From contig OZ249447.1 in the NCBI GenBank assembly GCA_965235115.1, forward strand, positions 10,168,001-10,232,000: a stretch of DNA of 64,000 nucleotides. Reading direction: 5' to 3'. The position numbers and the translations under genes were made by a program. Source of the stretch: Laetmonice hystrix. Lineage: Eukaryota. The notes beneath the pieces are model-generated. The model was not told the DNA's origin and ran no database searches. It saw only the letters and a program-made list of their open reading frames with translations. This document shows, in pieces, positions 1,738 to 60,594 of the stretch. Within the stretch, counting starts at the first letter, position 1; every line of letters begins with the position of its first letter.

Positions 1738-1751
1738 GAGAGAGAGAGAGA

Positions 1752-1811
<60 letters not shown>

Positions 1812-1813
1812 GA
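1738..1813. repeat. (GA)n microsatellite
   Basis: Direct reading; it produces the spurious ERERE/SLSLS ORFs. Confidence 0.95.
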
Positions 1814-1961
1814 GATTTTGTAACACAACTGTGTTTGTAAGCATATGTTCGATTCTATATTCTATACATAATGATAAATGGGATATCTGATCGGACAGGG
1901 ATATAATTACGTCTCCCCCCAGCTGGGGGAGACGTTTTGTTTTGCACGCTGTTTCTGACCG

Positions 1962-2016
<55 letters not shown>

Positions 2017-3680: not shown

Positions 3681-3689
3681 TAGGTAATT

Positions 3690-4622
3690 TTCAACCAAAG
3701 ATCAGTGATATCTCGAAAACGGTTAAAGATATCAATGTCTGGGTTTCACCTTTGGGTTTAGCATAAAAAACTTGACCCATCCTCAGCGAATTTGAAAAAT
3801 CCAAGATGGCGGCCAAGTTGACCTAATTTCCAATTTCAGCACCATTGGATTGGGTAATAGGTCCACTATCTCTGACACCGAGATGGCTCCCCTAAATTCG
3901 ATAGTTTCCATCTTATGGCCCCTCAAAGTTGGCCCTTTTAGGTTATTTTCAACCAAACATCAGTGATACCTCGAAAACGGTTAAAGATATCAACGTCTGG
4001 TTTTCACCATTGGGTTTGGGATGAAAACCTTGAGCCATTTTCCCTGAATTTGAAAAATCCAAGATGGCGGCCAAGTTGACCTAATTTCCGATTTTAACAC
4101 CATTGGATTGGGTAATAGGTCAGCTGTCTCTGACACCGAGATGGCTCCCCTAAAATCAATAGTTTCCAAGTTATGGCTCTTCAAAGTTGGCCCTTTTAGG
4201 TCATTTTCAACCAAAAATCAGTGATATCTCTAAAACGGTTAAAGATATCAACGTCTGGTTTTCACCATTGGGGTTAGGATGGAACACTTGACCCATTTAA
4301 ACTGAATTTGAAAAATCCAAGATGGCGGCCAAGTTGACCTAATTTCCGATTTTAAAACCATTGGATTGGGTAATGGGTCAGCTGTCTCTGACACCGAGAT
4401 GGCTCCCCTAAAATCAATAGTTTCCAAATTATGGCTCTTCAAAGTTGGCCCTTTTAGGTCATTTTCAACCCAAAATCAGTGATATCTCTAAAACGGTTAA
4501 AGATATCAACGTCTGGTTTTCACCATTGGGGTTAGGATGGAAAACTTGACCCATTTGAACAGAATTTGAAAAATCCAAGATGGCGGCCAAGTTGACCTAA
4601 TTTCCGATTTTAACACCATTGA
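3690..4622. repeat. 258-bp satellite, ~3.6 copies (inside HINE)
   Basis: CCAAGATGGCGGCC at 3801, 4059, 4317 and 4575 (period 258). Confidence 0.92.
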
Positions 4623-4899
4623 CTGGTGAATGGGATACCTGTGCCCTGGGCACCTCGCAACTAGTTAATCTTTTCTTTCGCATAGAAAATCTGCCATAGC
4701 TATATCATTGCTTTTGCAACACACTACTTTCATACTAATTAGTCTTCTCTCAAAAATTATATGATGTCATTACTTTAAAAAAGGGGAGACGTCCTGTTCG
4801 GACTGAACAATTTCTAGTTAGGCCTAGTATAAGTAATGGAATTTAGTTTTCATCATGGCTGCCCCCACCCGTTGAAAAAGCTGGTTCGGCCCCAGCAGG

Positions 4900-5321
4900 C
4901 CAGACTACTGACAGACGTGATGTACCAGGGGCAGCATGCAGAGGGAACGATTGGCGCGGAGTTAGCATTGTCAGATGTGTACATTCAGGTCTGGAGACGG
5001 GAGTCCGTGCCACAGACTACTGACAGACGTGATGTACCAGGGGCAGCAGATGGAACGATTGGCGCGGAGTTAGCATTGTCAGATGTGTACATTCAGGTCT
5101 GTAGACGGGAGTCCGTGCCACAGACTACTGACAGACGTGATGTACCAGGGGCAGCAGATGGAACGATTGGCGTGGAGTTAGCATTGTGTACATTCAGGTC
5201 TGTAGACGGGAGTCCATACCACAGACTACTGACAGACGTGATGTACCAGGGGCAGCAGATGGAACGATTGGCGTGGAGTTAGCATTGTGTACATTCAGGT
5301 CTGTAGACGGGAGTCCGTACC
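4900..5321. repeat. ~100-112-bp tandem repeat, 4 copies
   Basis: CAGACTACTGACAGACG at 4901, 5013, 5121 and 5222. Confidence 0.92.
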
Positions 5322-19174: not shown

Positions 19175-19392
19175 NNNNNNNNNNNNNNNNNNNNNNNNNN
19201 NNNNNNNNNNNNNNNNNNNNNNNNNNNNNNNNNNNNNNNNNNNNNNNNNNNNNNNNNNNNNNNNNNNNNNNNNNNNNNNNNNNNNNNNNNNNNNNNNNNN
19301 NNNNNNNNNNNNNNNNNNNNNNNNNNNNNNNNNNNNNNNNNNNNNNNNNNNNNNNNNNNNNNNNNNNNNNNNNNNNNNNNNNNNNNNNNNNN
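19175..19392. other. Assembly gap (218 N)
   Basis: Run of N. Confidence 1.
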
Positions 19393-20923: not shown

Positions 20924-22204
20924 ACATGTGATGCTCACGAAAAGACACCTAAATCTAATTGTGGTAACAACATAAATTGGTGATTTTTTCCCGTAAATTT
21001 CATATTCCAAATGCAGCACAACTATATGGTCACACCATAGATGGTACATCAACGTTACAGTAACTGACAGAATTGAACCGGTTTCTTCGTGATATCCCCT
21101 AAAATTACATGTACAGTCTGCAAACAACATTCCCTCTAAAATCCTCCCAAAGTGTCACAGCACCCCCCCCCCCCCCCGGGAAAATCCACATTTTTCTTAA
21201 TTAGATCCTTACTTTATTACGTTGACATTATAATGAGTATATACGCCTACGCCTGTAGTAGCCAAGCTTTGTACGGGCTCTCGAAAACTTTGAGTTTCGT
21301 ACGTAAATCAGATTTTATCTAGCCGGCTGTTCATTGCCTAGTAAGGACAGGCACCCAAGCTATACCAGTTGTGAAGGGAGAGCCCCCCCCCCCCCCCGTT
21401 ACACGCCAATCCTTGCGGTTAGTCACTGTCGCTCGGTTGGATCCAATGAAGCCGACCTGGCCACCTGAAACCCTTACAACTCGGCACTGTCTACACCAAT
21501 CACAGTCGAGCCATGCGCCGTGTATGGTGGAGAACCGCGGATTGTCACTTGGTGCTCGTTACGGGCGTAGTCAGAGCAGCTAGGGTTATATCACAAGGCA
21601 CATCGTTTTGGAGACCAACTATCAGGAAATTGGTTAGAGTCATTTTTTCTCTTTTCTCTCTCCCTTCTTTTTCTCATCTTTTCTTCTCAGTGGGCTCCTA
21701 AAGCTACAATTTAATGGAGTGACACTTTTGGGATAAGAGGCTATGAGTTGCCTTCAGAGGGTTGTGGCCCTAACAGGGATAGATAGCGAGGCATCGCAGA
21801 TTGTATGCCAGCGTTTCAAATGGGGACGTCACGACGTCGTGTCTGGGGTACAGCTCTTCTTCCTGCGCCTCCTCCTGCTCCTGCTCCTGCTCCTTCGAAA
21901 TGACGCCATGCACTTAGCTGTAAATTCTGTTCAATTCTAAAGGACTCATTGTGACGTCATTGGCGCCGCTTTTAAAGGTGAGGCAGCCATCCGACATGTT
22001 GAATTTTGGTAACTCGTATATTTCTTACCAAATGAGTTCGTTTGTGAAAACAGGGGAAAAGCATTAAAGTAACAGAATGTATGTCTAGGTCGAATGTACT
22101 TTAAATATTACCAAAACCACCACCCCTCCACCTAAACCCATGTCAAGTTAATCCATGCCACATAACTTTCCACGACCTGAAGTAAAGATCTCCCCTTCAA
22201 TAGA

Positions 22205-22752
22205 GCTTACCACTGGACCATTCTTACCCCTGCCCGTGCCGTACAAGACCGATGTCAGGATCCCAGCTTACCACTGGACCATTCTTACCCCTCCCCGTGC
22301 CGTACAAGACCGATGTCAGGATCCCAGCTTACCACTGGACCATTCTTACCCCTCCCCGTGCCGTACAAGACCGATGTCAGGATCCCAGCTTACCACTGGA
22401 CCATTCTTACCCCTCCCCGTGCCGTACAAGACCGATGTCAGGATCCCAGCTTACCACTGGACCATTCTTACCCCTCCCCGTGCCGTACAAGACCGATGTC
22501 AGGATCCCAGCTTACCACTGGACCATTCTTACCCCTGCCCGTGCCGTACAAGACCGATGTCAGGATCCCAGCTTACCACTGGACCATTCTTACCCCTCCC
22601 CGTGCCGTACAAGACCGATGTCAGGATCCCAGCTTACCACTGGACCATTCTTACCCCTGCCCGTGCCGTACAAGACCGATGTCAGGATCCCAGCTTACCA
22701 CTGGACCATTCTTACCCCTCCCCGTACCGTACAAGACCGATGTCAGGATCCC
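22205..22752. repeat. 61-bp minisatellite, 9 copies
   Basis: AGCTTACCACTGGACCATTCTTACCCCTCCCCGTGCCGTACAAGACCGATGTCAGGATCCC repeated. It has no + strand stops and so produces three overlapping repetitive ORFs. Confidence 0.96.
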
Positions 22753-23404
22753 AATTAAAGACCACCGGACAACGGAAGAGTCGGGTTGGGCCATCAGATC
22801 CACGGATGAACCACGTGACTACAGGGTGCCTCCTAGTGTCAGTGGTCGACACGAAACAGGCCGTCCGCCGCGTGCTTTCATCGTGGGAAGAAAGTAGCTG
22901 TAATTAGTGATGGAACCAGGACAGGTACACTGATTACCACTCCAAAACCCCTTCGGTAGGCACCCCCATCTCTCCACCCCGTTCCCGAATGTCAGCGTTT
23001 GTTTGAGGAGAGAGGTGGGGGCAATTACATTGAATAAACTACCCCACGATCAACCCCCATCCCTTGACTGCTAACAGGTTAATGGCCCGACTACAAGGGG
23101 TAAAGAACACACCCTGAATACGTAGTGACGTATGGGGCAGGTATACCATTGGATACCACTGTACTTAAGGGGTAATTAGGGAAATAGAGAATCTGCCTTT
23201 CTTTATCAGTGAAGTGGATTTTCTTGTATCCCCAGCGGGCAAAGTCTGCTCCGAAGATTCATCACCTAAAACTATGGGCTGTTTAATGGTCACTATACAA
23301 GCCATCTATTGAAGGCGCCCATACTGAAAGACAGCGGAAGGATGGACTAGAGGCTAACTCCGCAGTAACTGTGTCAGCCTCCTCTCACAGGCCGCCAGGG
23401 GAGT

Positions 23405-24994: not shown

Positions 24995-25775
24995 GGTGCG
25001 GGGGCGGCCAGCCCAGCTCTGAGAGTGGGCTGAGAGTGGGTGCGGGGGCGGCCAGCCCAGCTCTGAGAGTGGGCTGAGAGTGGGTGCGGGGGGGGGGCAG
25101 CCCAGCTCTGAGAGTGGGCTGAGAGTGGGTGCGGGGGGGGGGCGGCCAGCCCAGCTCTGACAGTGGGCTGAGAGTGGGTGCGGGGGGGGGGGGGGAGCCC
25201 AGCTCTGAGAGTGGGCTGAGAGTGGGTGCGGGGGCGGCCAGCCCAGCTCTGGGAGTGGGCTGAGAGTGGGTGCGGGGGGGCAGCCCAGCTCTGAGAGTGG
25301 GCTGAGAGTGGGGCGGGGGCGGCCAGCCCAGCTCTGAGAGTGGACTGAGAGTGGGTGCGGGGGGGGGGGGGCAGCCCAGCTCTGAGAGTGGGCTGAGAGT
25401 GGGTGCGGGGGGGGGGGAGCCCAGCTCTGGGAGTGGGCTGAGAGTGGGTGCGGGGGGGGGGGAGCCCAGCTCTGGGAGTGGGCTGAGAGTGGGTGCGGGG
25501 GGGGGGGCAGCCCAGCTCTGAGAGTGGACTGAGAGTGGGTGCGGGGGGGGGGGGGCAGCCCAGCTCTGGGAGTGGGCTGAGAGTGGGTGCGGGGGGGGGG
25601 GACAGCCCAGCTCTGAGAGTGGACTGAGAGTGGGTGCGGGGGGGGGGGCAGCCCAGCTCTGGGAGTGGGCTGAGAGTGGGTGCGGGGGGGGGGGGGCAGC
25701 CCAGCTATGGGAGTGGGCTGAGAGTGGGTGCGGGGGCGGCCAGCCCAGCTCTGGGAGTGGGCTTGGGTGCGGGGA
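24995..25775. repeat. G-rich ~40-45-bp minisatellite with variable poly-G tract
   Basis: CAGCCCAGCTCTG(A/G)GAGTGG(G/A)CTGAGAGTGGGTGCG(G)n, about 19 copies. Confidence 0.95.
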
Positions 25776-32710: not shown

Positions 32711-33957
32711 AGGTTTCCAGGCCCACCGCCAGCTGAAAGCCATCAGCCTCACGGATGAAGACATCCGATGACGTCCGAATGAAAGGCCCACGTGGCCGCC
32801 GTCGCCATGAGGCGGCCCCCAGCTGGCTCGATGACGGCACGGACCGGTTGGCGGATGGCACCCAGCCCGTGCCCAGCAGTGCCGAGTGACCAGACACAGG
32901 ACGGGAGGTGGGCGGTGAGCAGCGGGCGGCCGGTGTGGGGCGCCACAACCCAGACACGTGCCTCCAGCCTCACCATCACCAACATCAGACTGCGCAGGCG
33001 CAGACAACCAGCTCTATGGAAACACTTTCGCCTGTCTCCAGGTCGGCTGGGCACTAGGAACTTGTTGAATCTTCTTGCTTTCTCATTGCGGAAATTAACG
33101 GGAATCAGAGCATACAACAGCAGGTGGAAACGATCTATAGTCATCGGGTTCAGTTGAGTACGGTACATCATCCCCATATGAGGGATGTTATGGTGTCAAC
33201 GTTTCCAGAAAATAATGAAAAATATTGACAAAATGCATAGAACAAAGCACGTGTCGACATACAAACGGTACTTTACCATGAACACACAGGGACAGTGATG
33301 TATTTGCACAACACATCCCAGCTCCAAAAAGTGGGTGAGGGCTATACTGTTTAAAGCAAGGGGCATTGCTCCCTGCCCTCTGTTCTGAGTTTACTGACGG
33401 ATGTAGAGTTGTTGCCTACATTAGTGTGTATACACTTAGAGCCATGTGTGGGTGGTCTGTGAGATTGTTACTCAACCCTGACTGACTCCATTCTCCGAGT
33501 CCACAAACATGCTCCCCACATGAGACTTTCCTGACCTGACAAAGTGTTGACATGACCTCAGGGCGATTAATGTTTGTATCTTTCCAACCATCCTCTCCCC
33601 CTCCCACGCTATACACTGTACATCCCCAGTTACCGTACGCCTGCCTCCCAGAGAAACATATCGTCAGTAAAGTATTTAGAAAGACTTTAAGTAACTTTGT
33701 TAACTTTAACTTTGTCAGAACCTTGAATGCTCTCAAATTTCTTGTGGCCTTTACAGCGAATTTTATGATCCCAGATATTCAGACCTTATTGGGGAAGATT
33801 TTCAAATATATCCAGTTATAATAAAGTACGCAATACTTATATCAATCAATTAGATCAATATAATAAGTATAAATACGGATGGAAATGACCCCGTTTAAGC
33901 AGCCTGCAATATAGAGCCTTTCTATCTTACAATAGTAGAGTTGCCGACAGTGCTTAA

Positions 33958-34890
33958 ACCCACCAACACTCACCCACTAAATCACCTCAGTGACCAACCC
34001 ACCAAAACTCACCCACTAAATCACCTCAGTGACGAACCCACCAACACTCACCCACTAAATCACCTCAGTGACAAACCCACCAACACTCACCCACTAAATC
34101 ACCTCAGTGACAAACCCACCAACACTCACCCACTAAATCACCTCAGTGACAAACCCACCAACACTCACCCACTAAATCACCTCATTGACAAACCCACCAA
34201 CACTCACCCACTAAATCACCTCAGTGACAAACCCACCAACACTCACCCACTAAATCACCTCAGTGACCAACCCACCAACACTCACCCACTAAATCACCTC
34301 AGTGACAAACCCACCAACACTCACCCACTAAATCACCTCAGTGACCAACCCATCAACACTCACCCACTAAATCACCTCAGTGACAAACCCACCAACACTC
34401 ACCCACTAAATCACCTCAGTGACCAACCCACCAACACTCACCCACTAAATCACCTCAGTGACAAACCCACCAACACTCACCCACTAAATCACCTCAGTGA
34501 CAAACCCACCAACACTCACCCACTAAATCACCTCAGTGACCAACCCACCAACACTCACCCACTAAATCACCTCAGTGACAAACCCACCAACACTCACCCA
34601 CTAAATCACCTCATTGACAAACCCACCAACACTCACCCACTAAATCACCTCAGTGACAAACCCACCAACACTCACCCACTAAATCACCTCAGTGACAAAC
34701 CCACCAACACTCACCCACTAAATCACCTCATTGACAAACCCACCAACACTCACCCACTAAATCACCTCAGTGACAAACCCACCAACACTCACCCACTAAA
34801 TCACCTCAGTGACAAACCCACCAACACTCACCCACTAAATCACCTCAGTGACCAACCCACCAACACTCACCCACTAAATCACCTCAGTGA
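33958..34890. repeat. 39-bp minisatellite, ~24 copies
   Basis: CCCACCAACACTCACCCACTAAATCACCTCAGTGACAAA repeated; it gives a spurious 330-aa ORF. Confidence 0.97.
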
Positions 34891-36925: not shown

Positions 36926-38422
36926 TAATCGTATCATTCAGTGACCAAGACGGCTTCCACATGAAGTTTACATGAGTAGTTTCCACACCTTGCGGAGGTT
37001 ACGCTCCACTAAGTGCCTCTCAAATTCATTATACTATTCTTGATAAACAGATAGACGATACAGTTCGATTCAGTGTGAAAAACTTTGTTCCACTGTGACA
37101 GGAACTCGTCATCCCGACGGGGGAAGGGAAGAATGCGCAGCATGAAATCCGTACGCCAACTCGAGGTTCAGAAGTAGTCCATGGTAAGGAAGAGAGACCT
37201 CGGTAACCAGGGTAACGTCACTACCAGGGTCGGGAAGAAATCCCAGCGAGATGAAGGTGTTATTTGGGAGGTCTGTCCCCCGAACAACCACAACATACCA
37301 CCCAGCGCGAATGGCCTCTGATCTCCTTGGACCCTAACCATGAAGGGATCAACGCCTCCTCCCGTGTTTTCACCTCTCCTAATCCACGTCTAATGCTCGC
37401 ACCAAAATGTTTTATCATTTGGTCTTCATTTCAGATCAAGCTTGGATCCATCAAGATTAAGGTGTGAAATAAAAGCCACCTGTATGTCTAATCTCATCTC
37501 AAGGTGCGGCTTTGCTGACCCTTGGGGGCCGGGCGGTGTGGTGTAAGTGTGTGTGTGTCGTTCTGGGCCTGTCGGATACCTCTATCCCTGCCATAGATCC
37601 TAACCGGAGGGCTGAGGTGGGGTGGGGTGGGGGTCGAGGGGGTCGAGGGGGTGAGGCACGCGGCATGACGGGCACTCTGACAGCGGGAATGCCTCTGATC
37701 CACGTCCTCGGGGCTTCCCGCTGAAAACACCCGCCACGTGTGGGACAACCCCACCCGTCCTTCTACCCCGTCTATTCACCCCATCCCATTCACCCTCACC
37801 CCTCACCCCCTCACCCACCCTTTACCTTGAGCACATCTCCCGCTGGTACCTCACATTTTTCTGAGGCCATTGTAATTGGTACATATCCTATAGGGTAACC
37901 AGCCAACCCTTAGATCCCCACTTACGTCTAACCCCGAGGGATCTAAACCTTCGGCAAGTCCTGACACCGACCGTCCTACGTGCTTCCTGAGGGTTAACTG
38001 TTAAACGACCATCACTCGACCTCGTCACGTGACACGTCACGTGACACGTCATGTGGTACGGTTGTACCATACTGGCAAGCGAATGCTGTTCAGGAATGGC
38101 TGTTTTCTATTTTTTTTATTTTTATTTTTGGACTGTAATGCTTGCATCCTTTTGATGCTCCATGTGACAATAAGCGAGTAGTATGCTTAGACAGTTAGGC
38201 ATGTCGGTTAACTGACCAAGTTTAAACCTTAGCTGTACCGTGTGGAATATCTAAAATCCCACAGAGGTGTTGTAGATTATCGCACACGGCTCTACCCGTT
38301 ACGTCGTGATGATCTGATGAATCGTTGCCGTGTTATTAAACATGCAATATGTGATCACACGCCTGCCGGAGATTGTAAAGATGTCAATCTCGTACCACGA
38401 CACTCTATCAGATCTCTAGCAA

Positions 38423-39195
38423 TGATTTCATAAGATACTTGATGATGAGCTGCAACCACCGTACACCTCGACCTGTCGACCGTCTATGTCTTCAACCCGA
38501 TACTGTCGCTCCAATACAACGATTTCATAAGATACTTGGTGATGAGCTGCAACCACCGTACACCTCGACTTGTCGACCGTCTATGTCTTCAACCCGATAC
38601 TGTCGCTCCAATACAACGATTTCATAAGATACTTGGTGATGAGCTGCAACCACCGTACACCTCGACCTGTCGACCGTCTATGTCTTCAACCCGATACTGT
38701 CGCTCCAATACAACGATTTCATAAGATACTTGGTGATGAGCTGCTACCACCGTACACCTCGACTTGTCGACCGTCTATGTCTTCAACCCGATACTGTCGC
38801 TCCAATACAACGATTTCATAAGATACTTGATGATGAGCTGCAACCACCGTACACCTCGACTTGTCGACCGTCTATGTCTTCAACCCGATACTGTCGCTCC
38901 AATACAACGATTTCATAAGATACTTGATGATGAGCTGCAACCACCGTACACCTCGACCTGTCGACCGTCTATGTCTTCAACCCGATACTGTCGCTCCAAT
39001 ACAACGATTTCATAAGATACTTGGTGATGAGCTGCAACCACCGTACACCTCGACTTGTCGACCGTCTATGTCTTCAACCCGATACTGTCGCTCCAATACA
39101 ACGATTTCATAAGATACTTGATGATGAGCTGCAACCATCGTACACCTCGACTTGTCGACCGTCTATTACTTCAACCCGATACTGTCGCTGCAATA
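38423..39195. repeat. 97-bp tandem repeat, 8 copies
   Basis: GATTTCATAAGATACTTG(A/G)TGATGAGCTGCAACCACCGTACACC... with period 97. Confidence 0.96.
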
Positions 39196-39669
39196 CGGCC
39201 GGAAGTATCTAATGCAGTCAGTCCTCGTACTTATAATACTTATACTTTAACCTCCGAACACATTTCTTTTAACCTTTTCTACCATTCTCTATTTAAAATG
39301 GTCAGTAATCCATGTTTCACTGCCAGAACACATTTTGAATGCGCACCAAGCTGTTCGGTTCAGCGAGGTTCGCCTCGATATCTGTACAATAAATACATGG
39401 CAGCTGACTGCACTGACAGCTGTCAGTGGTTGCAATGAATGTTGACTTCCAGTACCAGTAGGAAGCTACCGTCACTGACGCTGGTGAAAGACCAAAGAAA
39501 CTTGCGAGTTGAATCTCCGCTTGCCTGTGAAAGTTGATATGTAAATTCCCTTTGATTGACAAGGAACAGGAAGAGTTATCTGCTCCAAGATTGACACCAG
39601 CAGCTGAGGTTTATCTCCGTTAAAAAATATACGTGTTTAATTAAAGCAGCAGACGTGAGGAGACTGGCT

Positions 39670-40727: not shown

Positions 40728-42765
40728 ATACCTTGACTCCTCTCAACCCCACGCTTAAATTACGGTCCACACCTGCTCTCAAGTGGTCCCTCCGACTTTA
40801 TCCATCTCCAGCACCTCGCTGCAACACTCCAATACTACGCACACACTCCCATACTACGCACACACCACGCCCTCTACACTCACCAATACCCCTGGATGCC
40901 ACATGTCTACACGTCAACCTGACACGGGTCTGTAATATGAAATGGTCCCGTTTTAAGGACTCTCTATTAGCCACCGTTGATGAGGTCCTTTACTTTGGGT
41001 AGGAGGTGAGCACTGCCTAGGTCATGTAACAAGTTAGGTAGGTGATTTAGTAATCAAAGACTCCGAGTGACTTCTAAGTGCCACTTACTTGTGTAAAGGT
41101 AGATTTCCACATGATGCAGGGTCTCTCTTGCATTCACAATATGCTCCCGGGGTTCTCTCGAAAACCTGAAAGAAGAAAAAAACCATACCTGATTCATATT
41201 CGCCGTCCATTATGTAGGAAAGAGATGTGAGCATTAAAATCTATGGGCGGATCCAGTAACATTTTGTAGAAGGGTCTAACCATCGGGCAAAAACATATGA
41301 TTAGGCCAAGGCCAAAAAGGTTGAGTATACGAGGGCCACTTCCGAAAGTCCCTGTATATTTATAATAAATGACGTTACACCCATGTATCATTCTGATCTG
41401 AAGCAAAGATGTAAATGTTTGATCACCCCCGTAAGCACCCCCCCCCCCCCCCGCCGTGAGCGCGCGCTCGGCCGTATGACCGCATGAGTCGGCCGGTTGG
41501 TAGACCACGTGTTCGCCACGTGTTGAGAGGGTTTACAACATGTCCGAGTGACCAAGATAGGTACCGACAGGCATCGTTATGAATTCTCGCAGGCCACTCA
41601 TGTTCTCCCACTACATGGCCAACACGGCCCAGGATTAAATAACCCTAACCTTTGACCTGTACGCCACCCCCAGGCGCTGAAGCGATCCTGCTTGATTTAT
41701 GCCAGGGTATTTGGTCTATTAAATGTCCCGCGAGAAAAAGTGTCCCATCTCTTCTCATTACAACTTCTTTCTGTTCATATATTGTCATGTAGAATTCCGC
41801 ATGTCCTGAACCCACTTTGATGTTAAATAACTATTCTTACACGGCAATATGATGGTCGGAACCAACACACACGTATCATTCAAATTCTGCCAGATTACCC
41901 CTTGTCACCAATGAACTTCTAAACTCAGACTTCCAAGATTGGAGAGGTTGTTCGTCTCCATCAAGTGTCATTTAATAAAGATGGAGTTCCCTCTATCTTT
42001 TACGGATACTAAAGATAAATGGGTATATAAAAAATTGAAAATGAATTTAGAAAGAAATGGGCGAGTCACCGCTTCAAAACTGGAGTTTAATCCAGGCTTG
42101 CCAGGTGCTACACATCTTCATGTACTGGCGTGTACACAACGTCATTCTGCCCAGGTTAATAGCCATAATAGAAACTTATTTTTTCTCCTTACTACTAAGG
42201 TTACTTGCAGAATTAAAATTCTCCAAGGTAAGATTTCTGCTACTTCATCAGGTTAAACTGAGAGAGAAGAATAAAATGTTACTGATCCCACTGACCGAAA
42301 CGGCACCTGGTCACCTGAGCTGGCCGCACGGGCGGAGCCATTGGTCTTGTAGCTCCCCTGGCGGCCGGCTGGGTAACTACAGATCGATGGGATAAAGACA
42401 CAGCCGTCATAATGGACCCCACCCCTGTGTGTCAGTGACACTGCGCCGGGGGCGGGACGGCTAATGGTGGGATGGACACTGGACCTATAGTTTCCCGCCC
42501 TGACCCTCGACATCTCTATCCTGTGAGTAAATCGTCTCCTCACCACCTGGTCAGTTCCCAGTGCGTGTGGTCAGCTCCTGTCCGAGTGGACAGTATACCC
42601 AGTCAATCTGTATACTGGTTCAATCGGGTAGGATCGGCATATGGCTTACAGTATATGGACCGACCTTTGGCTATAAAATGCAGTGGTTGTCTATATGAAG
42701 CAGTAATTGCTTTAAAATACAGGGGGCATCATGATGTACCGGCCTTTGGCTTCAAAAGTTAATAC

Positions 42766-43812
42766 AGTGGGCATCAGGATGGGCCGGTCTCTATATGACT
42801 TCTAAATACAGTGGGCATCAGGATGGGCCGGTCTCTATATGACTTCTAAATACAGTGGGCATCAGGATAGGCCGGTCTCTATATGACTTCTAAATACGAC
42901 AGTGGGCATCAGGATGGACTGATCTATGACTTCTAAATACAGTGGGCATCAGGATGGGCCGGTCTCTATATGACTTCTAAATACAGTGGGCATCAGGATA
43001 GGCCGGTCTCTATATGACTTCTAAATACGACAGTGGGCATCAGGATGGACTGATCTATGACTTCTAAATACAGTGGGCATCAGGATGGGCCGGTCTCTAT
43101 ATGACTTCTAAATACGACAGTGGGCATCAGGATGGACCGATCTATGACTTCTAAATACAGTGGGCATCAGGATGGACCGGTCTATCACTTCTAAATACAG
43201 TGGGCATCAGGATGGACCGATCCATGACTTCTAAATACAACAGTGGGCATCAGGATGGGCCGGTCTCTATATGACTTCTAAATACAACAGTGGGCATCAG
43301 GATGGGCCGGTTTCTATATGACTTCTAAATACGACAGTGGGCATCAGGATGGACCGATCTATGACCTCTAAATACAACAGTGGGCATCAGGATGGACCGG
43401 TCTATCACTTCTAAATACAGTGGGCATCAGGATGGACCGATCCATGACTTCTAAATACAACAGTGGGCATCAGGATGGGCCGGTCTCTATATGACTTCTA
43501 AATACAACAGTGGGCATCAGGATGGGCCGGTCTCTATATGACTTCTAAATACGACAGTGGGCATCAGGATAGACCGATCTATGACTTCTAAATACAGTGG
43601 GCATCAGGATGGGCCGGTCTCTATATGACTTCTAAATATGACAGTGGGCATCAGGATGGACCGACCTATGACTTCTAAATACAGTGGGCATCAGGATGGG
43701 CCGGTCTCTATATGACTTCTAAATACGACAGTGGGCATCAGGATGGGCCGGTCTATGACTTCTAAATACAGTGGGCATCAGGATGAACCGATCTATGGCT
43801 TCAGAATACAGT
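42766..43812. repeat. 40-47-bp variant minisatellite with higher-order blocks, ~24 copies
   Basis: CAGTGGGCATCAGGATGG...ATGACTTCTAAATA with optional CGA/CAA and TCTA modules. Rare variants recur at 131-bp and 220-bp spacing. Confidence 0.95.
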
Positions 43813-45264
43813 GGCGATCAGGACGCACCGGTCAATGGCTTCGGAATGCAGTGGGCGTCAGGACTGACCAGCATACAGACTCTGAACCAACGACAATGTA
43901 TGGAAAAGATGGATGCGATGACATGTTTTGATTACGGGCGAGTTTTCTTGCCCATGAAGATTCTTCTACTGTCCGACTGAGGGACAGAATCAAAATCATC
44001 TTCCACCCAGACGATGGTGCTGACTGAAGATATTGCGGGACCAAGGTTGTCCACGTTAACCTGCACTTGTTCAGTGACCCCAGTCCACCCCCCGTTCCCA
44101 CCCCTCTACCACCCCCTTCACACCCCCATATCCACCCCGAACCTCCCCACCCCGCCCCTCGAGTATCTCACACTTGGATGGTCTGGAGTCAGTCTGTCGG
44201 ATCTGCTTGGACGGCTCATAATGCTGTCAGATGGCCCTAACATATGGCACCAACATATGGCCCAAACATATGGCACTTATCTACATGCTACATGAATGCT
44301 CCGAAGGAATCTGTTCCTAATGTGTCGGACACGGATTCACGCTACACTATAAATTGCCCACGGACTATCCTTCCACGCAGTGTGATATAGCTGGTCCACT
44401 TGGAATATAAGAAGTAAGAGACTGAACATGAAATGGGCCGCGCTTACTTTCAAAACATAAACGCGTTTACTTACCAGAAATACTGAGGAGCATTATCCGT
44501 TTATCATATATCTGCTCAAAATCTAGCAGAGGCGGGTGTGGGCTAAATCCTTGAAAAGTTTATACATACACGGTCAACCGTGAAAGCCACAAAATCATAA
44601 CCTGATTAACAGGACCAAGGTTTCATGCCGTTTTCCACGAAGCGCAAAGAAAAAATTCTTGCCCAGAAATCAATATTCTTCAATTGTCTCTCGTCCCCAT
44701 CAATCCATAGATGTTTGCCTTTCATTGCCATTTTTGTGTATGTTCATTAACTTCCTTCGGCTCCCGCCGATTCTCGTCAGTGGAATTCATTGTTAGGTTT
44801 TCTACCAATTCACTATGTGAAATATGATATGGTACACGTTATCCTAGCCGTCTTGGTGATAACTGGCGAGGTGGCATTCTGCCGCAATGGCCATCACAGC
44901 TTTTTATATCATCTTGGATAACTCCATTATGCCTTTTTACTTCTGCTATTGTCTCAGCTGCAACAGTTAATTTGTTTCCAATTATGTTTTTGTAATTTGA
45001 TAAACTACCTAAATAAGAATGCTGTAATACTTAGTATTTGCCCACTCGGCAGTCTGGGATAATTTCAAATGATCACTCCTTGGTATCCGATCGACATGGT
45101 AATTGAGATTGGGATTTTCCCAACAAACTTGGTTCAGGTTTGTAAATATAACTAATTGATTCTATTAAAAAGTGTGTGAAACAATTCCCAAGAAGCTATT
45201 TCCCCTCATTCCTATCCCAGAATTTACAAGAATGATTCGATTTATGTGGATAACACTGCCCTTT

Positions 45265-45535
45265 CAGTGGCGGATTTAAGGGGGGGCGGGTTAATGGGGT
45301 TGCAGCCCCCCCCCCCCGCTACGAAGTAATTTTTTTTCCTGCTTGAAAGGTTCACACAAAACATATACAACCCCCCCCCCCCCCGGTTGGCGCAAACCGG
45401 GATTCATCCTGCCTTTATAGTTATCATCTGGGCTTTGGGTCGAAAATTGGCCGATCATATTGATCGGCCCGAAAAGCCCGAAAAGCCCGAAAAGCCCGAA
45501 AAGTGCGAAAAGCCCGAAAAGAGAATCCACGGCTG
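45265..45535. mobile_element. MITE-like element, similar in style to 20766-20923, with internal 9-bp GCCCGAAAA repeats
   Basis: CAGTGGCGGATT at 45265 and an imperfect (9/12) inverted copy AATCCACGGCTG ending at 45535; internal poly-C tracts. Confidence 0.45.
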
Positions 45536-45987
45536 TAGGAGGGATAAACATTACAACCGACTAGTTTTTTGTAGTTATTTTGACTGCAACTGTTGAAAAA
45601 AAACTTTGTACGACTAGAACAATCAGATTTAACATATTTTGGTAAAATGGAGAAGGCTTGGTCGGATAATGTTACGATATACGCGTATGTACGACACAAC
45701 AACAGTAAAACTTGTGGAATGTAATATCTGTATTGTAGCATTACAATCAACATTATAGCAACATGGGCGGGTTTCTTAATCTCCAAACGATCACATATTA
45801 TGAGCTCGATGTCTGTCAATCAATGAATCAATTAATTGTCAATCAATGTCAAGCATGTTGGCACAAGCTAAATATACATTATACTAACAACACTAACAGA
45901 GCAGAGCAGAGCAGAGCTGTCCATGCTGGCAGTTTGACTGCCAATTCGAATTAACCACTAATGTGCGTCCAAAACGTCTCATACGTC

Positions 45988-46275
45988 TTAGACGATGTAC
46001 GTTTCATATAGGATATGATATTGAGGTCCAATAATCACAGCAGTTGTCGGGTTCCCCGTTATAGGTCGGCAAGAATCGCTGTCACCCGCGCATCCAGAAA
46101 TCTGCCCCTTCTTCCGACGGAATTCCTCGGTGACGGATACAGGAAGAAAGCGCAGCGTGCGGCACCCCTCCTCCTTTCTCTGTCCCAATCTATACCTTTG
46201 GTAAATGTCATGACTCCAGACCATAGTTTCAAGGAATGAGCTGTTGTGTGGCGTCAACTGTCCGGTGAAAGGTCT
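45988..46275 (-). pseudogene. In-frame post-stop extension resembling a degenerate TGF-beta-family ligand domain
   Basis: 95 open codons directly after the TAA: ...QRKEEGCRTLRFLPVSV...SGCAGDSDSCRPITGNPTTAVII...ILYETYIV*. These echo the CR...F.V, C.G.C, CC.P...P and ...MIV..CGC motifs, but only 3 Cys remain. Confidence 0.35.
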
Positions 46276-47007
46276 TTACTTGACTAAACACGGGTGGACG
46301 ATGAGTTTGGGAATGAAGACGTCACCATCGGCGTCATACCATGCGTTGATTCTGAACGTACACGCCCAGCTGTTCTCGGAACGCTTCGAGTGACGTATCG
46401 TCTCCAGGACGTCTATGAGAGAAACTTTCAGGTGGCCGCTCGGTGTTTCCCTATACTCGGACACCAGCTCCGCCTTGGTGACGTTAGCACCGGCGTTATT
46501 CTCCGATATCCACGGAGTCAGGTCATACGTGAACTGAACAATGTCGTCGCTTGGAGGCAGGAACCTGATCAGGTGAGCCTCGCATGGATCCCTCTGGTAG
46601 GGCTTTAGACCGGTGAGCACCAACCAACGGTTACTGGCGGGAGGTGCCGGGAGGACTGACCTGGAGAACACCGGTTGGTGAGATCGCCTGCCCCGCCCGG
46701 CTTCGCTGGAGGACGTCTCCTCCTGCGTCTGTTGACGGGGGCTATCCTGGAGGAGAAGACGGAGCAGAGGTTCTCCTTGTGCGACCCCCTGGTCCTGGAG
46801 GAGAGCAGGTCTGAAGAAGGGCGTTGCGGCGACCGCCATGGCGTCGGCGCGGTCCCGGGAGGAGCTCGCCGTTTGTGCCGGGGCCGGAGAACCGGACCGC
46901 CCGGATAACTGCCCGGAGGACTGGCGTAGAGGAATCACACATGTTGCCGCGAGTAGACCCGCCAGTGTGACCAGAGCAATGAAGAGAAACATGAGGAAAC
47001 TGAACAT
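46276..47007 (-). CDS. Intronless secreted precursor, 243 aa, with a TGF-beta propeptide-like domain
   Basis: First ATG is at 47007 (the track starts at an upstream TTG). Hydrophobic signal peptide MFSFLMFLFIALVTLAGLLAA and a furin-type RGRR|S site. The motifs YQRDP..AHLIRFL, QFTYDLT, NVTKAEL (N-glyc sequon), IDVLETIR and PKLIVH align by eye with TGF-beta prodomains (e.g. Nodal YRDP..ADIIRSL..FAFDF..WAEL). Coding-like GC content and an upstream TATA box. Confidence 0.7.
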   Translation of the reverse strand: MFSFLMFLFIALVTLAGLLAATCVIPLRQSSGQLSGRSGSPAPAQTASSSRDRADAMAVAATPFFRPALLQDQGVAQGEPLLRLLLQDSPRQQTQEETSSSEAGRGRRSHQPVFSRSVLPAPPASNRWLVLTGLKPYQRDPCEAHLIRFLPPSDDIVQFTYDLTPWISENNAGANVTKAELVSEYRETPSGHLKVSLIDVLETIRHSKRSENSWACTFRINAWYDADGDVFIPKLIVHPCLVK

Positions 47008-47078
47008 CTTCAAGAACGTCGTCGCTATCAATCAGCTTCAACTCGACCGTGTGCCGACCAGTCCCCTCCCTTCTCACC

Positions 47079-47085
47079 TTATATA
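47079..47085 (-). promoter_or_regulatory. TATA box of the secreted-protein gene
   Basis: TATATAA on the minus strand, ~72 nt upstream of the ATG. Confidence 0.55.
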
Positions 47086-47529
47086 CCAAACACGATCCCA
47101 CCGTCTTTATCGATATATACTTTATTAAACAAAAGTACTGCGGCAAAAGGACGCGCCGCCTTTCTCAGGAAACCTGCCTTTTGAGGTGTAACCGTCCTTC
47201 TGTAACATGAACAAAGACGTTACCAAAGATGGAATGTATAGGTCGTATTATCATTGTTTCGGTTTCAAAATTCACCTTCCGGTGTGTGACAATATCTTGG
47301 CGGATATTGGAATCAATATCTTGGCGGATATTGAAATCTATTCCGTTCTATTTTTAATTGTTCGAGCAACACGTGATCGGTCCATCGACGTCACCATCTT
47401 CCGCTGTAAAAGTTTTAGCCTAAATCCAGCTCTTCGAGTTAGTTTTCTGAACAAAGTTATACTTAAATATAGAATAATGATATACTTCTTTTTGATTAAG
47501 TTTCTTTTTTTACAGCATACCTCGAGCTA

Positions 47530-47763
47530 CGATGATCTGAGCTGAGCTGAGCAGAGCAGAGCAGAGCAGAGCTGAATGGAGCTGAGCTGAACTGAGCAGA
47601 GCTGAGCTGAATAAAACTGAGCTGACCTGAGCTAAGTAGAGCTGAGCAGTTCTGGTCACGTGAGATCAGGTTGAGCTAGTTGTGGATTTTATATATGGGC
47701 TGGGTCTGCTAACGAAAAAAGACCTCGGTTGTTCCAGCTCAACTCAGTTCAGCTCAGATCACG
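47530..47763. mobile_element. TA-flanked MITE built from (GAGCT/GAGCA)n pentamers
   Basis: TA|CGATGATCTGAGCTGAGCTGAG ... CTCAGTTCAGCTCAGATCACG|TA, i.e. imperfect TIRs and a TA duplication. Confidence 0.6.
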
Positions 47764-48489: not shown

Positions 48490-49375
48490 GGAAACCTGCT
48501 CTAGGTACCGCTACCACACCAGGGACCTGCTCTAGGTACCGCTACCACACCAGGGACCTGCTCTAGGTATACCGCTACCACACCAGGGACGAAGGACCTG
48601 CTCTAGGTACCGCTACCATACCAGGGACCTGCTCTAGGTACCGCTACCACACCAGGGACGAAGGACCTGCTCTAGGTACCGCTACCACACCAGGGACGAA
48701 GGACCTGCTCTAGGTACCGCTACCACACCAGGGACCTGCTCTAGGTACCGCTACCACACCAGGGACGAAGGACCTGCTCTAGGTACCGCTACCACACCAG
48801 GGACCTGCTCTAGGTACCGCTACCATACCAGGGACCTGCTCTAGGTACCGCTACCATACCAGGGACCTGCTCTAGGTACCGCTACCACACCAGGGACCTG
48901 CTCTAGGTACCGCTACCACACCAGGGACGAAGGACCTGCTCTAGGTACCGCTACCATACCAGGGACCTGCTCTAGGTACCGCTACCACACCAGGGACCTG
49001 CTCTAGGTACCGCTACCACACCAGGGACGAAGGACCTGCTCTAGGTACCGCTACCACACCAGGGACCTTCTCTAGGTACCGCTACCATACCAGGGACGAG
49101 GGACCTGCTCTAGGTACCGCTACCATACCAGGGACCTTCTCTACCGCTCTAGGTACCGCTACCACACCAGGGACGAAGGACCTGCTCTAGGTACCGCTAC
49201 CATACCAGGGACCTGCTCTAGGTACCGCTACCATACCAGGGACCTTCTCTACCGCTCTAGGTACTGCTACCATACCAGGGACCTGCTCCAGGTACCGCTA
49301 CCATACCAGGGACAAGAACTGCTCTAGGTACCGCGACCATACCAGGGACCTGCTCTAGGTACCGCTACCATACCG
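48490..49375. repeat. 31/38-bp variant minisatellite, ~27 copies
   Basis: GGACCTGCTCTAGGTACCGCTACCA(C/T)ACCAG with or without a GGACGAA module. Confidence 0.96.
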
Positions 49376-59130: not shown

Positions 59131-60594
59131 CTGCACAGCCAGGACCCTGAACTAATGGCTGACGGTTCACCCGAGGGGTATGTGTCCTCAAGCTCGGCAA
59201 TGTCCACTACTGAAGTTAATGGGTAATGTACGAACAAAAACATCAACCAGCACACACTCTTGTTTTCAATAGTGGATTTGTATAGTTAGACGTTGGTCAA
59301 GTGAGGTGGCACATGAATATAATTTATCAGAGAATTTTCCACTCCAACACCGACAGCAACCAACTCCTCCGTTTTACGAATAATATTAGGAACTAGAAGT
59401 AATTAAATCCTGTCTGTCTGTTTGTCTGTCTGTCTATTCGGCTTCCTGCCTTAAGATCGTCCAATGTAATAACCCGAACGTGATACTGCCATATACTTCT
59501 TTCTGTCATGATTTTATCAGTGAAAGAAATAACGTCTTTTAGAATTGCCACCCCGCAGACAGTGAAGGTTACAGAGTGTAAAGGTAAAGTTTTCCCATCG
59601 CAAGTTATCGCCCGCGTTCATTTCAACCGTTCTCAGATAGCACGTGTCGTAAAGGGATCCGCCCACATAATGCCAATACTTTGTACATCGCTAAACTATG
59701 GTAGTTATATTAACAGTTACTGTTAAAATTCTTCTAAAGGCGACAATTATCAACTCTATAACTATACCTTGGGGATCTGCATGCAGCAGGGTGGGGAGCA
59801 GGAGTCCGCGAAAATTTAACAAATGGTTGATTTTCAGCCTAAAACCTTGAGTCCAAAGGCATTTGTTTCCTCAAGCAAGTTTAAACACGTAGGTTGGGAA
59901 CTTTTGTTTGGCGATGACTCAACCCCAGGGTTTGAAATCTGGGGGTTGTTGCTGTGTGAAAGGGCTCAATTTTCAGTGTATTCTGTCAGGATCCTGTCTG
60001 AGCCCCACATTCTGTCCACAATCTAACCAAATCTCTGGCCGTCCCTCCGTGTTTGCATTTTTCAGCTGTTTAACCCCGGTCCACACTTCAGCCGCGCAGG
60101 CCCTGTCATTTCCAGGGCCCTGAGCTGGAGGCGCCATCCCGCCTCCCACCAACTGTGTCATGTAACGTGGTCACTCGGCTCCACATGAAAAGACCGGCAA
60201 AATACAAGTAGCTAAAAGTGGTCAAATTAGGCAGCCACTGTGGGTATGGAGTCTTGACGGACCTCTATTATCCGACTATTCTCCAGGCCGAGTCTCTCCC
60301 GGGGGAAAATCACCCTAGCAAAACGGCACCATCCTGGCGGCCAGCTTCTGAACTTGATTTCTGATGTCAAGCTATTGACCAACACGGTGCCCTTGAAATG
60401 CGATCTAAGAACCTTTTAATACGCAGTAAAAAGTCTCTGCTGTGGTGGGGTCTCTTATATTGCACTCATGGGTTCATAATTATATTGTATGATTTAAATC
60501 TTAAATGTCCGTCAGTACTGAGACTCGGACACATCCCCCGACTCATCCCCCCCATTCAGTCCGTTCACACTGTCACTTGGCACTATCGTCAAGT

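What the first reader, a model, noticed from the sequence alone, without database searches (positions are those of the whole stretch)
45988..47007. TGF-beta-prodomain-like gene whose stop codon is followed in frame by a fossil ligand-like domain
Seen in sequence: the 243-aa ORF ends PKLIVHPCLVK-TAA, and the track ORF 45988-46257 is in the same frame, giving 95 open codons after the stop. Established knowledge: TGF-beta precursors are signal peptide + prodomain + cystine-knot ligand. Inference from by-eye comparison with Nodal: CRTLRFLPVS ~ CRKVKFQVD, SGCAGDS ~ YRCEGEC, SCRPITGNPTTAVII ~ CCAPVKTKPLSMLYV, and ILYETYIV* ~ LLDHHKDMIV(EECGC). Four or more knot cysteines, the wrist helix and a furin site before the ligand are missing. 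The locus may therefore encode a prodomain-only secreted protein, possibly a ligand antagonist or chaperone, with the decayed ligand left in the 3' UTR. It could also be a recent pseudogene.
Basis: partly seen in the sequence, partly recalled or inferred. Interest (0 to 1): 0.8.

Follow-up and report, generated by a model that had tools for sequence, protein, structure and literature searches.

The report
Orphan secreted-protein gene; ligand fossil unsupported
This is probably a species-restricted gene for a small secreted protein whose tail faintly resembles the pro-piece of TGF-beta growth factors, but the "fossil growth-factor domain" proposed after its stop codon cannot be told from chance.

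Summary
The sequence facts hold. On the minus strand, a 243-codon ORF (47007 to 46276) ends ...PKLIVHPCLVK-TAA, and 95 in-frame codons stay open down to a TAA at 45990-45988.

The ORF looks like a real single-copy gene:
- It has a signal peptide and a TATATAAG box 78 nt upstream.
- GC is 59% against 41-44% in the flanks, with clear codon periodicity.
- It is less polymorphic than its flanks.

No homologue was found in two very large protein searches, and no RNA data exist.

TGF-beta prodomain likeness gets weak but repeatable support. A profile of this genome's own prodomains scores the ORF best of 3168 six-frame tiles of the window (p about 0.002 by shuffling). Protein-language-model neighbours are TGFb_propeptide clusters (0.90-0.91). 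Against this, Pfam, a BMP2/4 profile and pairwise BLAST find nothing, hhalign aligns only 9 columns, and the AlphaFold models are unusable.

The "fossil ligand" is not supported:
- Every test gives p of 0.08 or worse.
- A random tile elsewhere in the window scores higher.
- A second haplotype carries a 2-bp deletion that ends the frame after 27 codons.

An open frame of that length is about a 1% chance event. Interest is low to moderate.

The parts
47078..47085 (-). TATATAAG, a TATA-box-like octamer 78 nt upstream of the ATG. No upstream ATG lies between it and the start. Caveat: the same bases also read AAG|GTGAGA, a splice-donor-like string.
   Evidence: read directly from the sequence. The promoter role is inferred, not shown.
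46276..47007 (-). 243-codon ORF plus its TAA stop (46276-46278). Single copy in the 627-Mb genome.
   Evidence: ORF. (single copy at protein and DNA level). GC 59.4% against flanks of 41-44%, GC by codon position 0.605/0.49/0.687, and a dinucleotide shuffle keeps the frame open in 0.2% of trials; codon-usage log-odds of the C-terminal half is +0.11 per codon, like known exons at 0.10-0.17.
46945..47007 (-). Signal-peptide-like N-terminus (residues 1-21, MFSFLMFLFIALVTLAGLLAA).
   Evidence: AlphaFold models a helix at residues 2-22 with pLDDT 92-93. Secretion is inferred.
46633..46941 (-). Low-complexity, probably disordered linker (residues 23-125). It holds LLRLLL (81-86) and a furin-type site, RGRR (105-108; 46684-46695).
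   Evidence: pLDDT is 25-47. Codon log-odds here are equivocal (-0.06). Cleavage is inferred from the R-X-K/R-R consensus, which is established knowledge.
46279..46632 (-). Beta-strand-rich C-terminal domain (residues 126-243). It carries the weak TGF-beta-prodomain-like signal: HLIRF (145-149), an NVT sequon followed by KAELVS (175-183), and a dibasic RHSKR (205-209).
   Evidence: Own-genome prodomain HMM. hhalign aligns NVTKAELVS to TLTAAELRL. Atlas hits on residues 105-243. Strand pattern from low-confidence models.
45988..46275 (-). Post-stop open frame in the same frame: 95 codons plus TAA at 45988-45990. This is the proposed 'fossil ligand'. Best read as untranslated or non-coding sequence.
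   Evidence: open run about a 1% event; GC by codon position is flat at 0.495/0.474/0.537. Searches show no ligand signal.
46191..46192 (.). Polymorphic 2-bp (TA) deletion in contigs of runs X1 and X2. It turns the post-stop frame into ...DIYQR-TAG after 27 codons.
   Evidence: table 4; translation of the deleted form; sequence context GGTATAGA.
45884..45905 (.). (CAGAG)n microsatellite just downstream of the unit. It varies in length between haplotypes. The same motif, in the same orientation, lies upstream at 47514-47663.
   Evidence: (indels at 45884-45895).

Best explanation
The locus is a single-exon, single-copy, lineage-restricted gene for a secreted protein. The protein has three parts: a signal peptide; a disordered linker with a furin-type RGRR site; and a beta-rich C-terminal domain of about 120 residues. 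That last domain is most likely a very divergent relative of the 'arm' of TGF-beta-family prodomains.

Translation ends at a genuine TAA. The 95 open codons behind it are untranslated sequence that is open by chance, not a demonstrable ligand relic.

Inferred mechanism, not shown: the protein is secreted, cut at RGRR by a proprotein convertase, and its prodomain-like domain binds TGF-beta/BMP/activin-type ligand dimers in trans. Free prodomains of myostatin, GDF11 and TGF-beta do this, and the protein would then act as a latency factor or antagonist.

Shown: ORF integrity, coding-like composition, single-copy status, lower polymorphism than the flanks, and a weak family-specific profile signal.

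Inferred: transcription, secretion, cleavage, fold and ligand binding.
For: - ORF and start context. TATATAAG lies 78 nt upstream with no upstream ATG.
- Coding-like composition: GC 59% against 41-44%; GC at codon positions 0.605/0.49/0.687; 0.2% of dinucleotide shuffles stay open.
- Codon log-odds of the C-terminal half are +0.11, like seven known exons of this genome.
- Single copy.
- Polymorphism: 2 SNPs and no indel in the 732-bp ORF, against 4 SNPs plus a 2-bp deletion in the 288 bp after the stop.
- Prodomain signal: own-genome prodomain HMM gives 5.7-5.8 bits, with 0 of 1000 full shuffles and 9 of 5000 local shuffles as good. Leave-one-out p is 0.001-0.011. Sixty-three non-coding decoy ORFs reach at most 5.0 bits.
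- The locus is the best of 3168 six-frame tiles of the window.
- hhalign P = 0.017 on NVTKAELVS.
- Atlas neighbours are TGFb_propeptide clusters at 0.90-0.91, for both the whole protein and residues 105-243.
- Against a ligand relic: and the frameshift haplotype.
Against: - No homologue in 5.8 billion proteins (word-seeded search) or in 1.84 billion cluster representatives (phmmer). A related species in the same databases holds orthologues of two TGF-beta genes at 76% and 84% identity.
- No RNA run holds the locus, so expression is unknown.
- Pfam PF00688 gives no hit. A BMP2/4-only prodomain profile and pairwise BLAST give nothing.
- The atlas 'recognition' value of 1646 is in the range of shuffled proteins, and only 159-162 of 256 features are shared. 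The tool itself rates this as weak evidence.
- AlphaFold models have pLDDT 38-41, so no fold test was possible.
- No AATAAA or ATTAAA occurs on the coding strand for 4.2 kb after the stop.
- The TATA-like box also reads as a splice-donor-like AAG|GTGAGA.
- The N-terminal half has equivocal codon statistics.
- The SNP contrast rests on very few sites: Fisher p = 0.14 for the ORF against all flanks.
Confidence: 0.42

Rival explanations
1. Not a functional gene. The ORF is a chance or very young (de novo) open frame in a local GC-rich island within a minisatellite-rich gene desert. The signal-peptide-like start, the TATA-like box and the faint prodomain signal are coincidences.
For: No homologue anywhere and no RNA evidence. 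The surroundings have no recognisable genes and many minisatellites. GC-rich sequence is poor in stops: a 134-codon ORF in another frame and 96-104-codon ORFs on the other strand overlap it. At the window's rate of long intervals, a 627-Mb genome should hold many chance ORFs of this length. There is no canonical poly(A) signal for 4.2 kb. Atlas recognition is in the shuffled range.
Against: Strong three-base periodicity and codon usage like real exons in the C-terminal half. Only 0.2% of dinucleotide shuffles of the ORF stay open. The other five intervals of 243 or more codons in the window appear to be frames of tandem-repeat arrays. Signal peptide and a consensus TATA octamer sit at the right distance. 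SNP density is lower than in the flanks and there is no indel. Family-specific profile signal is rank 1 of 3168.
Confidence: 0.25
2. A real orphan secreted-protein gene whose resemblance to TGF-beta prodomains is spurious. It would be a taxon-restricted secreted protein or a peptide precursor cut at RGRR and RHSKR, unrelated to TGF-beta signalling.
For: Pfam, the BMP2/4 profile, BLAST and PDB phmmer all find nothing. hhalign matches only 9 columns. The HMM signal is below 7 bits. The language-model score is in a range that 4-10% of shuffled proteins reach, by the tool's own figures. No TGF-beta gene lies anywhere on this chromosome-scale contig.
Against: Two different kinds of method, a profile HMM and language-model features, point to the same family out of thousands. 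The HMM signal survives local shuffling, leave-one-out and natural-sequence decoys.
Confidence: 0.18
3. One reading: a former TGF-beta precursor gene that gained a stop, now makes a prodomain-only protein, and keeps its decayed cystine-knot ligand as an in-frame fossil in the 3' UTR.
For: The 95 in-frame open codons are about a 1% event. GC after the stop (50%) is intermediate between the ORF and the flanks. BLASTP of residues 2-22 against the wrist-helix region of paralogue L005 gives E = 0.008 for that single comparison. In this genome the prodomain arm and the ligand normally share one exon.
Against: The two best alignments put the ligand in mutually incompatible registers. After allowing for multiple comparisons nothing is significant: p = 0.085, 0.10, 0.08, 0.23 and 0.31. 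A random plus-strand tile at 59403-59762 scores 8.3 bits against the same ligand HMM, while the locus scores 2.2 bits or less and ranks 76th or worse. The frame has only 3 Cys in 95 residues, which is the random expectation, and no codon periodicity. The atlas gives no usable hit. All four SNPs are non-synonymous in that frame, and a 2-bp deletion haplotype ends it after 27 codons. A relic old enough to have lost all detectable similarity should also have collected stops.
Confidence: 0.1
4. The TAA lies inside an intron. The bases CAA|GTAAAG at the stop act as a splice donor, and the protein continues in an unrecognised downstream exon. Alternatively, the ORF is the first exon of a larger gene.
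For: GTAAAG overlaps the stop. There is no poly(A) signal for 4.2 kb. TGF-beta genes of this genome are multi-exon.
Against: The donor lacks both the -1 G and the +5 G of the consensus (sequence; consensus from established knowledge). No PF00019 match lies on this contig. No cystine-knot-like open frame was seen on the minus strand between 25000 and 46300, and ligand-HMM tiles there are at noise level.
Confidence: 0.05

Closest known systems
TGF-beta family propeptide (Pfam PF00688; the 'arm' domain of LAP and of pro-BMP, pro-activin and pro-myostatin)
   Same: It sits after a signal peptide and a flexible N-terminal segment and is beta-strand-rich. It has a strand followed by an N-glycosylation sequon and then an AEL-type strand: NVTKAELVS here, against NMS...LTAAELRL in this genome's BMP2/4-like gene. 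It gives a weak positive score against a profile of this genome's own prodomains. Language-model neighbours are PF00688 clusters.
   Different: It fails the Pfam model outright. It is much shorter than a usual arm. No cystine-knot ligand follows. It is intronless, whereas the paralogues are split. No TGF-beta gene lies on the same chromosome-scale contig.
Prodomain-only relatives in databases: atlas clusters 'protein anachronism' (PF00688 in 56% of members, no PF00019 listed) and 'TGF-beta propeptide domain-containing protein' (PF00688 in 87%)
   Same: These are secreted proteins that carry a TGF-beta-propeptide-like domain without a recognised ligand domain. They are the nearest clusters by language-model features, at 0.90-0.91.
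   Different: Those clusters are arthropod proteins of 350-370 residues that do match Pfam. This ORF has 243 residues, does not match Pfam, and shares no detectable sequence with them. The link rests on an embedding score only. I found no open paper describing Anachronism as a propeptide-domain protein.
Lefty-type and other divergent TGF-beta members (atlas cluster 'LFTY2 factor (Fragment)')
   Same: This is one of the three nearest clusters (0.90; 162 of 256 features) and is similar in length at 247 residues.
   Different: Lefty proteins keep a cystine-knot ligand. Here none is detectable in the ORF or behind the stop.
Taxonomically restricted ('orphan') secreted-protein genes of marine invertebrates
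   Same: Single exon, signal peptide, disordered GC-rich N-terminal part, no homologue outside the lineage, and a location in repeat-rich DNA.
   Different: It has a structured-looking C-terminal domain with a faint family signal, which a purely de novo ORF would not be expected to show.

Membership tests
TGF-beta superfamily precursor | N-terminal signal peptide | tested here: met
   Hydrophobic residues 1-21 directly after the ATG, modelled as a helix with pLDDT 92-93. No dedicated signal-peptide predictor was available.
TGF-beta superfamily precursor | Prodomain that matches the TGFb_propeptide profile (PF00688) | tested here: not met
   hmmscan at E<=10 gives no family. The six-frame genome scan with PF00688 at E<=1 gives 17 hits, none on this contig.
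TGF-beta superfamily precursor | Prodomain 'arm' similarity by more sensitive or custom profiles | tested here: inconclusive
   Own-genome HMM gives 5.7-6.5 bits, p about 0.002, rank 1 of 3168 tiles. hhalign gives P = 0.017 over 9 columns, probability 2.6%. The atlas gives 0.90-0.91. The BMP2/4 profile gives no signal.
TGF-beta superfamily precursor | Prodomain-arm beta-sandwich fold | tested here: inconclusive
   Two AlphaFold2 single-sequence runs gave mean pLDDT of 40.8 and 38.0. That is too low for a fold search, and no homologues exist to build an alignment.
TGF-beta superfamily precursor | R-X-X-R convertase site immediately before a C-terminal ligand | tested here: not met
   RGRR (residues 105-108) lies before the prodomain-like domain, not after it. 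RHSKR (205-209) lacks Arg at P4. No basic site precedes the first Cys of the post-stop frame (GQRKEEGC).
TGF-beta superfamily precursor | C-terminal cystine-knot ligand (PF00019; six or seven spaced Cys: CxGxC, CC, CxC) | tested here: not met
   Pfam gives none for either piece. There is no PF00019 match on the contig. The ligand HMM gives 1.0 bit after the stop, 0.7 bit for the join with X, and -0.1 bit for the ORF tail, all within shuffles. Only 3 Cys occur in the 95 post-stop codons, with no CxGxC, CC or CxC.
Prodomain-only TGF-beta-like secreted proteins (Anachronism-type architecture) | PF00688-type domain present and ligand domain absent in a secreted protein | tested here: inconclusive
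   Absence of a ligand is met. Presence of a true PF00688-type domain is not established (see rows above).
Processed pseudogene or decayed copy of a TGF-beta gene | Detectable DNA or protein similarity to a parent gene, with frame disruptions | tested here: not met
   The ORF has no other match in the genome at protein or DNA level. The 243-codon frame is intact in the reference and in the sample's contigs.

The most novel reading that the evidence does not exclude
The ORF is a functional, lineage-specific descendant of a TGF-beta family gene that has lost its ligand. It survives as a free, secreted prodomain 'arm' that traps or chaperones TGF-beta/BMP/activin ligands in trans. It has diverged so fast that only a trace of the family signature remains. 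The ligand-relic part of the idea is not required for this reading and is unlikely.
Probability: 0.25. Interest if true: 0.55.

Novelty: new member of a known kind. Interest (0 to 1): 0.27.

Why it matters
If the prodomain reading is right, this would be a natural case of a TGF-beta prodomain set free from its ligand. Free prodomains of myostatin, GDF11 and TGF-beta are known to hold ligands latent. A gene-encoded, ligand-less prodomain in a worm would therefore be a candidate extracellular regulator of BMP or activin signalling. It would also illustrate how a signalling gene can be recycled into its own antagonist.

As things stand, the evidence supports only an orphan secreted-protein gene with a faint family trace. 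The eye-catching part, a fossil ligand behind the stop, does not survive testing. That outcome is a useful caution about motif matching by eye: a random tile elsewhere in the window matched the ligand profile better than the proposed fossil.

Tried and rejected
1. Pfam on both halves at E<=10: nothing.
2. Word-seeded search of 5.8 billion proteins and exhaustive phmmer of 1.84 billion representatives: no hit. Exact look-ups: the protein is not on record.
3. AlphaFold2 on the whole ORF and on residues 108-243, single sequence: pLDDT 40.8 and 38.0. I therefore ran no fold search, which would be meaningless on such models.
4. RNA evidence: two run searches found only three DNA runs of one sample. 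Laying them gave haplotype differences but no transcript information.
5. My own alternative register for a ligand spanning the stop had three parts:
   - the first ligand Cys at ORF residue 216 and the TAA at the second Cys of CxGxC;
   - TPHNSSFLETMV as the wrist helix and CRTLRFLPVSV as CC-P..L.P.S;
   - GCAG as the terminal CGC.
   It looked attractive by eye. It scored 0.7 bit with X at the stop, and 210 of 2000 shuffles did as well, so I rejected it.
6. The BLASTP wrist-helix hit to paralogue L005 (E = 0.008 for one comparison) and the L009 register are incompatible with each other. Neither survives correction for nine paralogues.
7. PDB phmmer: post-stop residues 6-37 match an HGF kringle at E = 0.09. 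Pfam does not confirm it, so I treat it as noise. The ORF's only PDB hits are a low-complexity match to ATP-citrate synthase at E of 2.7 or worse.
8. A BMP2/4-only prodomain and ligand profile built from 64 full-length proteins gave no signal.
9. Search for a real ligand exon downstream: no PF00019 match on the contig, no cystine-knot-like open frame at 25000-46300 on the minus strand, and tiles at noise level.
10. Synteny route to the related species: no conserved gene lies within 10 kb to serve as an anchor.
11. Rfam on the whole window: no RNA family.
12. Transposon check: the locus is single copy and no terminal repeats flank it apart from (CAGAG)n microsatellites.
13. Literature: no open paper found on 'prodomain-only' TGF-beta proteins or on Anachronism as a propeptide-domain protein.
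Full report
**What is there**

The feature lies on the minus strand. An ATG at 47007 (context GAAGATGT) opens a 243-codon frame that ends ...PKLIVHPCLVK with TAA at 46278-46276. The same frame then stays open for 95 more codons, down to TAA at 45990-45988.

The window is G000 contig 13, 10,168,001-10,232,000, in a 627-Mb animal genome. Notes from earlier agents call the animal a worm with giant cuticle collagens (not checked here). The nearest named BMP2/4 hits are lophotrochozoan and other invertebrate proteins.

**Is the ORF a gene?**

Evidence for a real gene:
- The ORF is a GC island: 59.4% GC against 41-44% on either side.
- It has marked codon periodicity. GC at codon positions 1/2/3 is 0.605/0.49/0.687. 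Seven known TGF-beta exons of this genome show 0.553/0.451/0.579.
- Only 0.2% of dinucleotide shuffles of the ORF stay open.
- A codon log-odds score trained on those seven exons gives +0.11 per codon for the C-terminal half. The exons themselves give 0.10-0.17, and all other frames are negative. The N-terminal, low-complexity half is equivocal at -0.06.
- Residues 1-21 form a classic hydrophobic signal sequence.
- TATATAAG sits 78 nt upstream, with no intervening ATG.
- The locus is single copy at protein and DNA level.
- Contigs of three DNA runs from one sample carry 2 SNPs (D229A and a synonymous S125) and no indel in the 732-bp ORF. The 288 bp after the stop carry 4 SNPs plus a 2-bp deletion. 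The numbers are small.

Evidence against:
- No RNA run holds the locus.
- There is no homologue in a 5.8-billion-protein word-seeded search or in an exhaustive phmmer of 1.84 billion representatives.
- A related species in the same databases has orthologues of two TGF-beta genes at 76% and 84% identity, yet nothing like this ORF.
- The neighbourhood is a minisatellite-rich desert with no recognisable genes.
- No AATAAA or ATTAAA occurs on the coding strand for 4.2 kb after the stop.
- The TATA-like octamer also reads as a donor-like AAG|GTGAGA.

I put a real gene at roughly two in three.

**Is it prodomain-like?**

Standard tools say no:
- Pfam gives no family at E<=10.
- PF00688 scanned over the genome finds 17 exon hits, none on this contig.
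- PDB phmmer finds only a low-complexity match.
- Both AlphaFold2 single-sequence models are unusable, at pLDDT 40.8 and 38.0.

Two more sensitive and methodologically different tests agree on a faint signal.

(a) Profile HMM. I built an HMM from the prodomain parts of the last exons of eight TGF-beta paralogues of this genome.
- It scores ORF residues 101-243 at 5.7-5.8 bits.
- None of 1000 full shuffles and 9 of 5000 local (12-residue block) shuffles do as well.
- The reversed sequence scores 1.4 bits, and 63 non-coding decoy ORFs from the window reach at most 5.0 bits.
- The signal persists when any one paralogue is left out (p = 0.001-0.011).
- When all six frames of the 64-kb window are tiled, the top tile of 3168 is 46360-46719 on the minus strand, at 6.5 bits.
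- The aligned core is HLIRFLPPSD ... NVTKAELVS ... IDVLE. That is the strand, sequon and AEL-strand pattern seen in this genome's BMP2/4-like gene as RRFYFNMS...LTAAELRLY.
- hhalign agrees, but on only 9 columns (P = 0.017; 0 of 200 shuffles as good).

(b) Protein-language-model search. The nearest clusters for the whole protein, and for residues 105-243 alone, are TGFb_propeptide clusters at 0.90-0.91: 'TGF-beta propeptide domain-containing protein', 'LFTY2 fragment' and 'protein anachronism'. The tool itself warns that recognition (1646) and shared features (155-162 of 256) are in the weak range.

A BMP2/4-only profile of 64 full-length proteins sees nothing. I rate true homology to the prodomain arm at about even odds, given that the gene is real.

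**Is there a fossil ligand after the stop?**

I tested this in every way available, always treating the pieces apart or joining them with X at the stop.
- Pfam PF00019: nothing.
- Own-genome ligand HMM against the 95 residues: 1.0 bit, with 85 of 1000 shuffles as good.
- ORF tail plus X plus post-stop frame: 0.7 bit, with 210 of 2000 as good.
- Semi-global BLOSUM62 alignment to nine paralogous ligands: summed score p = 0.08, best pair p = 0.23.
- hhalign: 62 of 200 shuffles as good.
- Language-model search: no usable hit.
- Tiling: no frame at the locus ranks better than 76th of 3168. A random plus-strand tile at 59403-59762 aligns to 66 columns of the ligand HMM at 8.3 bits, including an 'iaP...CxGx' look-alike. 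This shows how easily such matches arise.

The two best-looking pairwise alignments are mutually incompatible in register. The other is a 'wrist-helix' match of post-stop residues 2-22 to L005. I also built a third colinear register by eye that put the TAA on the second Cys of CxGxC, and it failed the same test.

Other properties of the frame point the same way:
- It has 3 Cys in 95 residues, which is the random expectation.
- It has flat codon-position GC.
- All four SNPs are non-synonymous in that frame.
- In contigs of runs X1 and X2, a TA deletion at 46191-46192 creates a TAG after 27 codons, before any of the claimed motifs.

The open run itself is a 0.7-1.4% event. That is notable, but it was selected after the fact. 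I put the fossil-ligand reading at about 10%.

**Other readings**

The TAA overlaps a GTAAAG that could be a donor, but it lacks both the -1 G and the +5 G. No ligand-like exon lies downstream within the window. No Rfam family and no transposon signature explain the locus.

**How it most likely works (inferred)**

The protein is secreted and cut by a convertase at RGRR (residues 105-108). That would release a C-terminal domain of about 135 residues with one N-glycan site (N175) and three Cys. If this domain is a prodomain arm, the simplest function is binding TGF-beta-family ligand dimers in trans, as free prodomains of myostatin, GDF11 and TGF-beta do (established knowledge). None of this is shown.

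**Comparison and novelty**

The protein fails the defining Pfam tests for both halves of a TGF-beta precursor, so I do not file it as a family member. It may work like a prodomain-only protein, an architecture already present in databases: the Anachronism-type clusters carry PF00688 without a listed PF00019.

The safest description is a taxon-restricted secreted-protein gene with a faint prodomain trace. The striking element of the original finding is not supported. Interest is low to moderate.

Noticed in passing
window 45884-45905 and 47514-47663: The 1.6-kb unit (TATA-like box, ORF, post-stop frame) is bracketed by (CAGAG)n-type pentanucleotide microsatellites in the same orientation. The downstream one varies in length between haplotypes. 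This could mark an old insertion or rearrangement, but the unit is single copy.
   Followed up: partly
window 45330-45390: A short element here has summed contig depth of about 1500-5000, against about 40-60 for its surroundings, and many contigs break there. It is a highly repeated (SINE- or satellite-like) sequence about 900 bp downstream of the stop.
   Followed up: no
window 1-64000 (e.g. 22204-22753, 25000-25763, 33956-34890, 38420-39196, 42709-43864, 48494-49374): The window is unusually rich in minisatellite arrays with periods of 31-258 bp. Several of them create long spurious ORFs of 250-330 codons. Apart from the ORF studied, no conserved protein-coding gene was recognised.
   Followed up: partly
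G000 contig 3, 36040481-36040699 (minus strand): A PF00688 (TGF-beta propeptide) match at E = 9.9e-7 with three in-frame TAA codons, and no PF00019 match listed nearby. This is a better candidate for a decayed TGF-beta prodomain than the locus studied.
   Followed up: no
window 46165-46260 (post-stop residues 6-37): Weak similarity to the kringle signature of hepatocyte growth factor (PH.HSFL...NYCRNP.GEEG; PDB phmmer E = 0.09). Pfam does not confirm it, so it is probably chance.
   Followed up: partly
window 59403-59762 (plus strand): This is the best match in the whole window to this genome's TGF-beta ligand profile (8.3 bits, 66 columns). It is at the level expected by chance for 3168 tiles and served as a natural negative control.
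   Followed up: partly
window 19175-19392: A run of 218 N (assembly gap or masked stretch). It was left untouched.
   Followed up: no
L009 (G000 contig 2, about 6281830-6282132) and L010 (contig 21, about 11358839-11359150): Two divergent TGF-beta paralogues with unusual prodomains and odd ligand spacing. L010 has an extra Cys in the pre-helix loop and an ASC in place of the CC motif.
   Followed up: no
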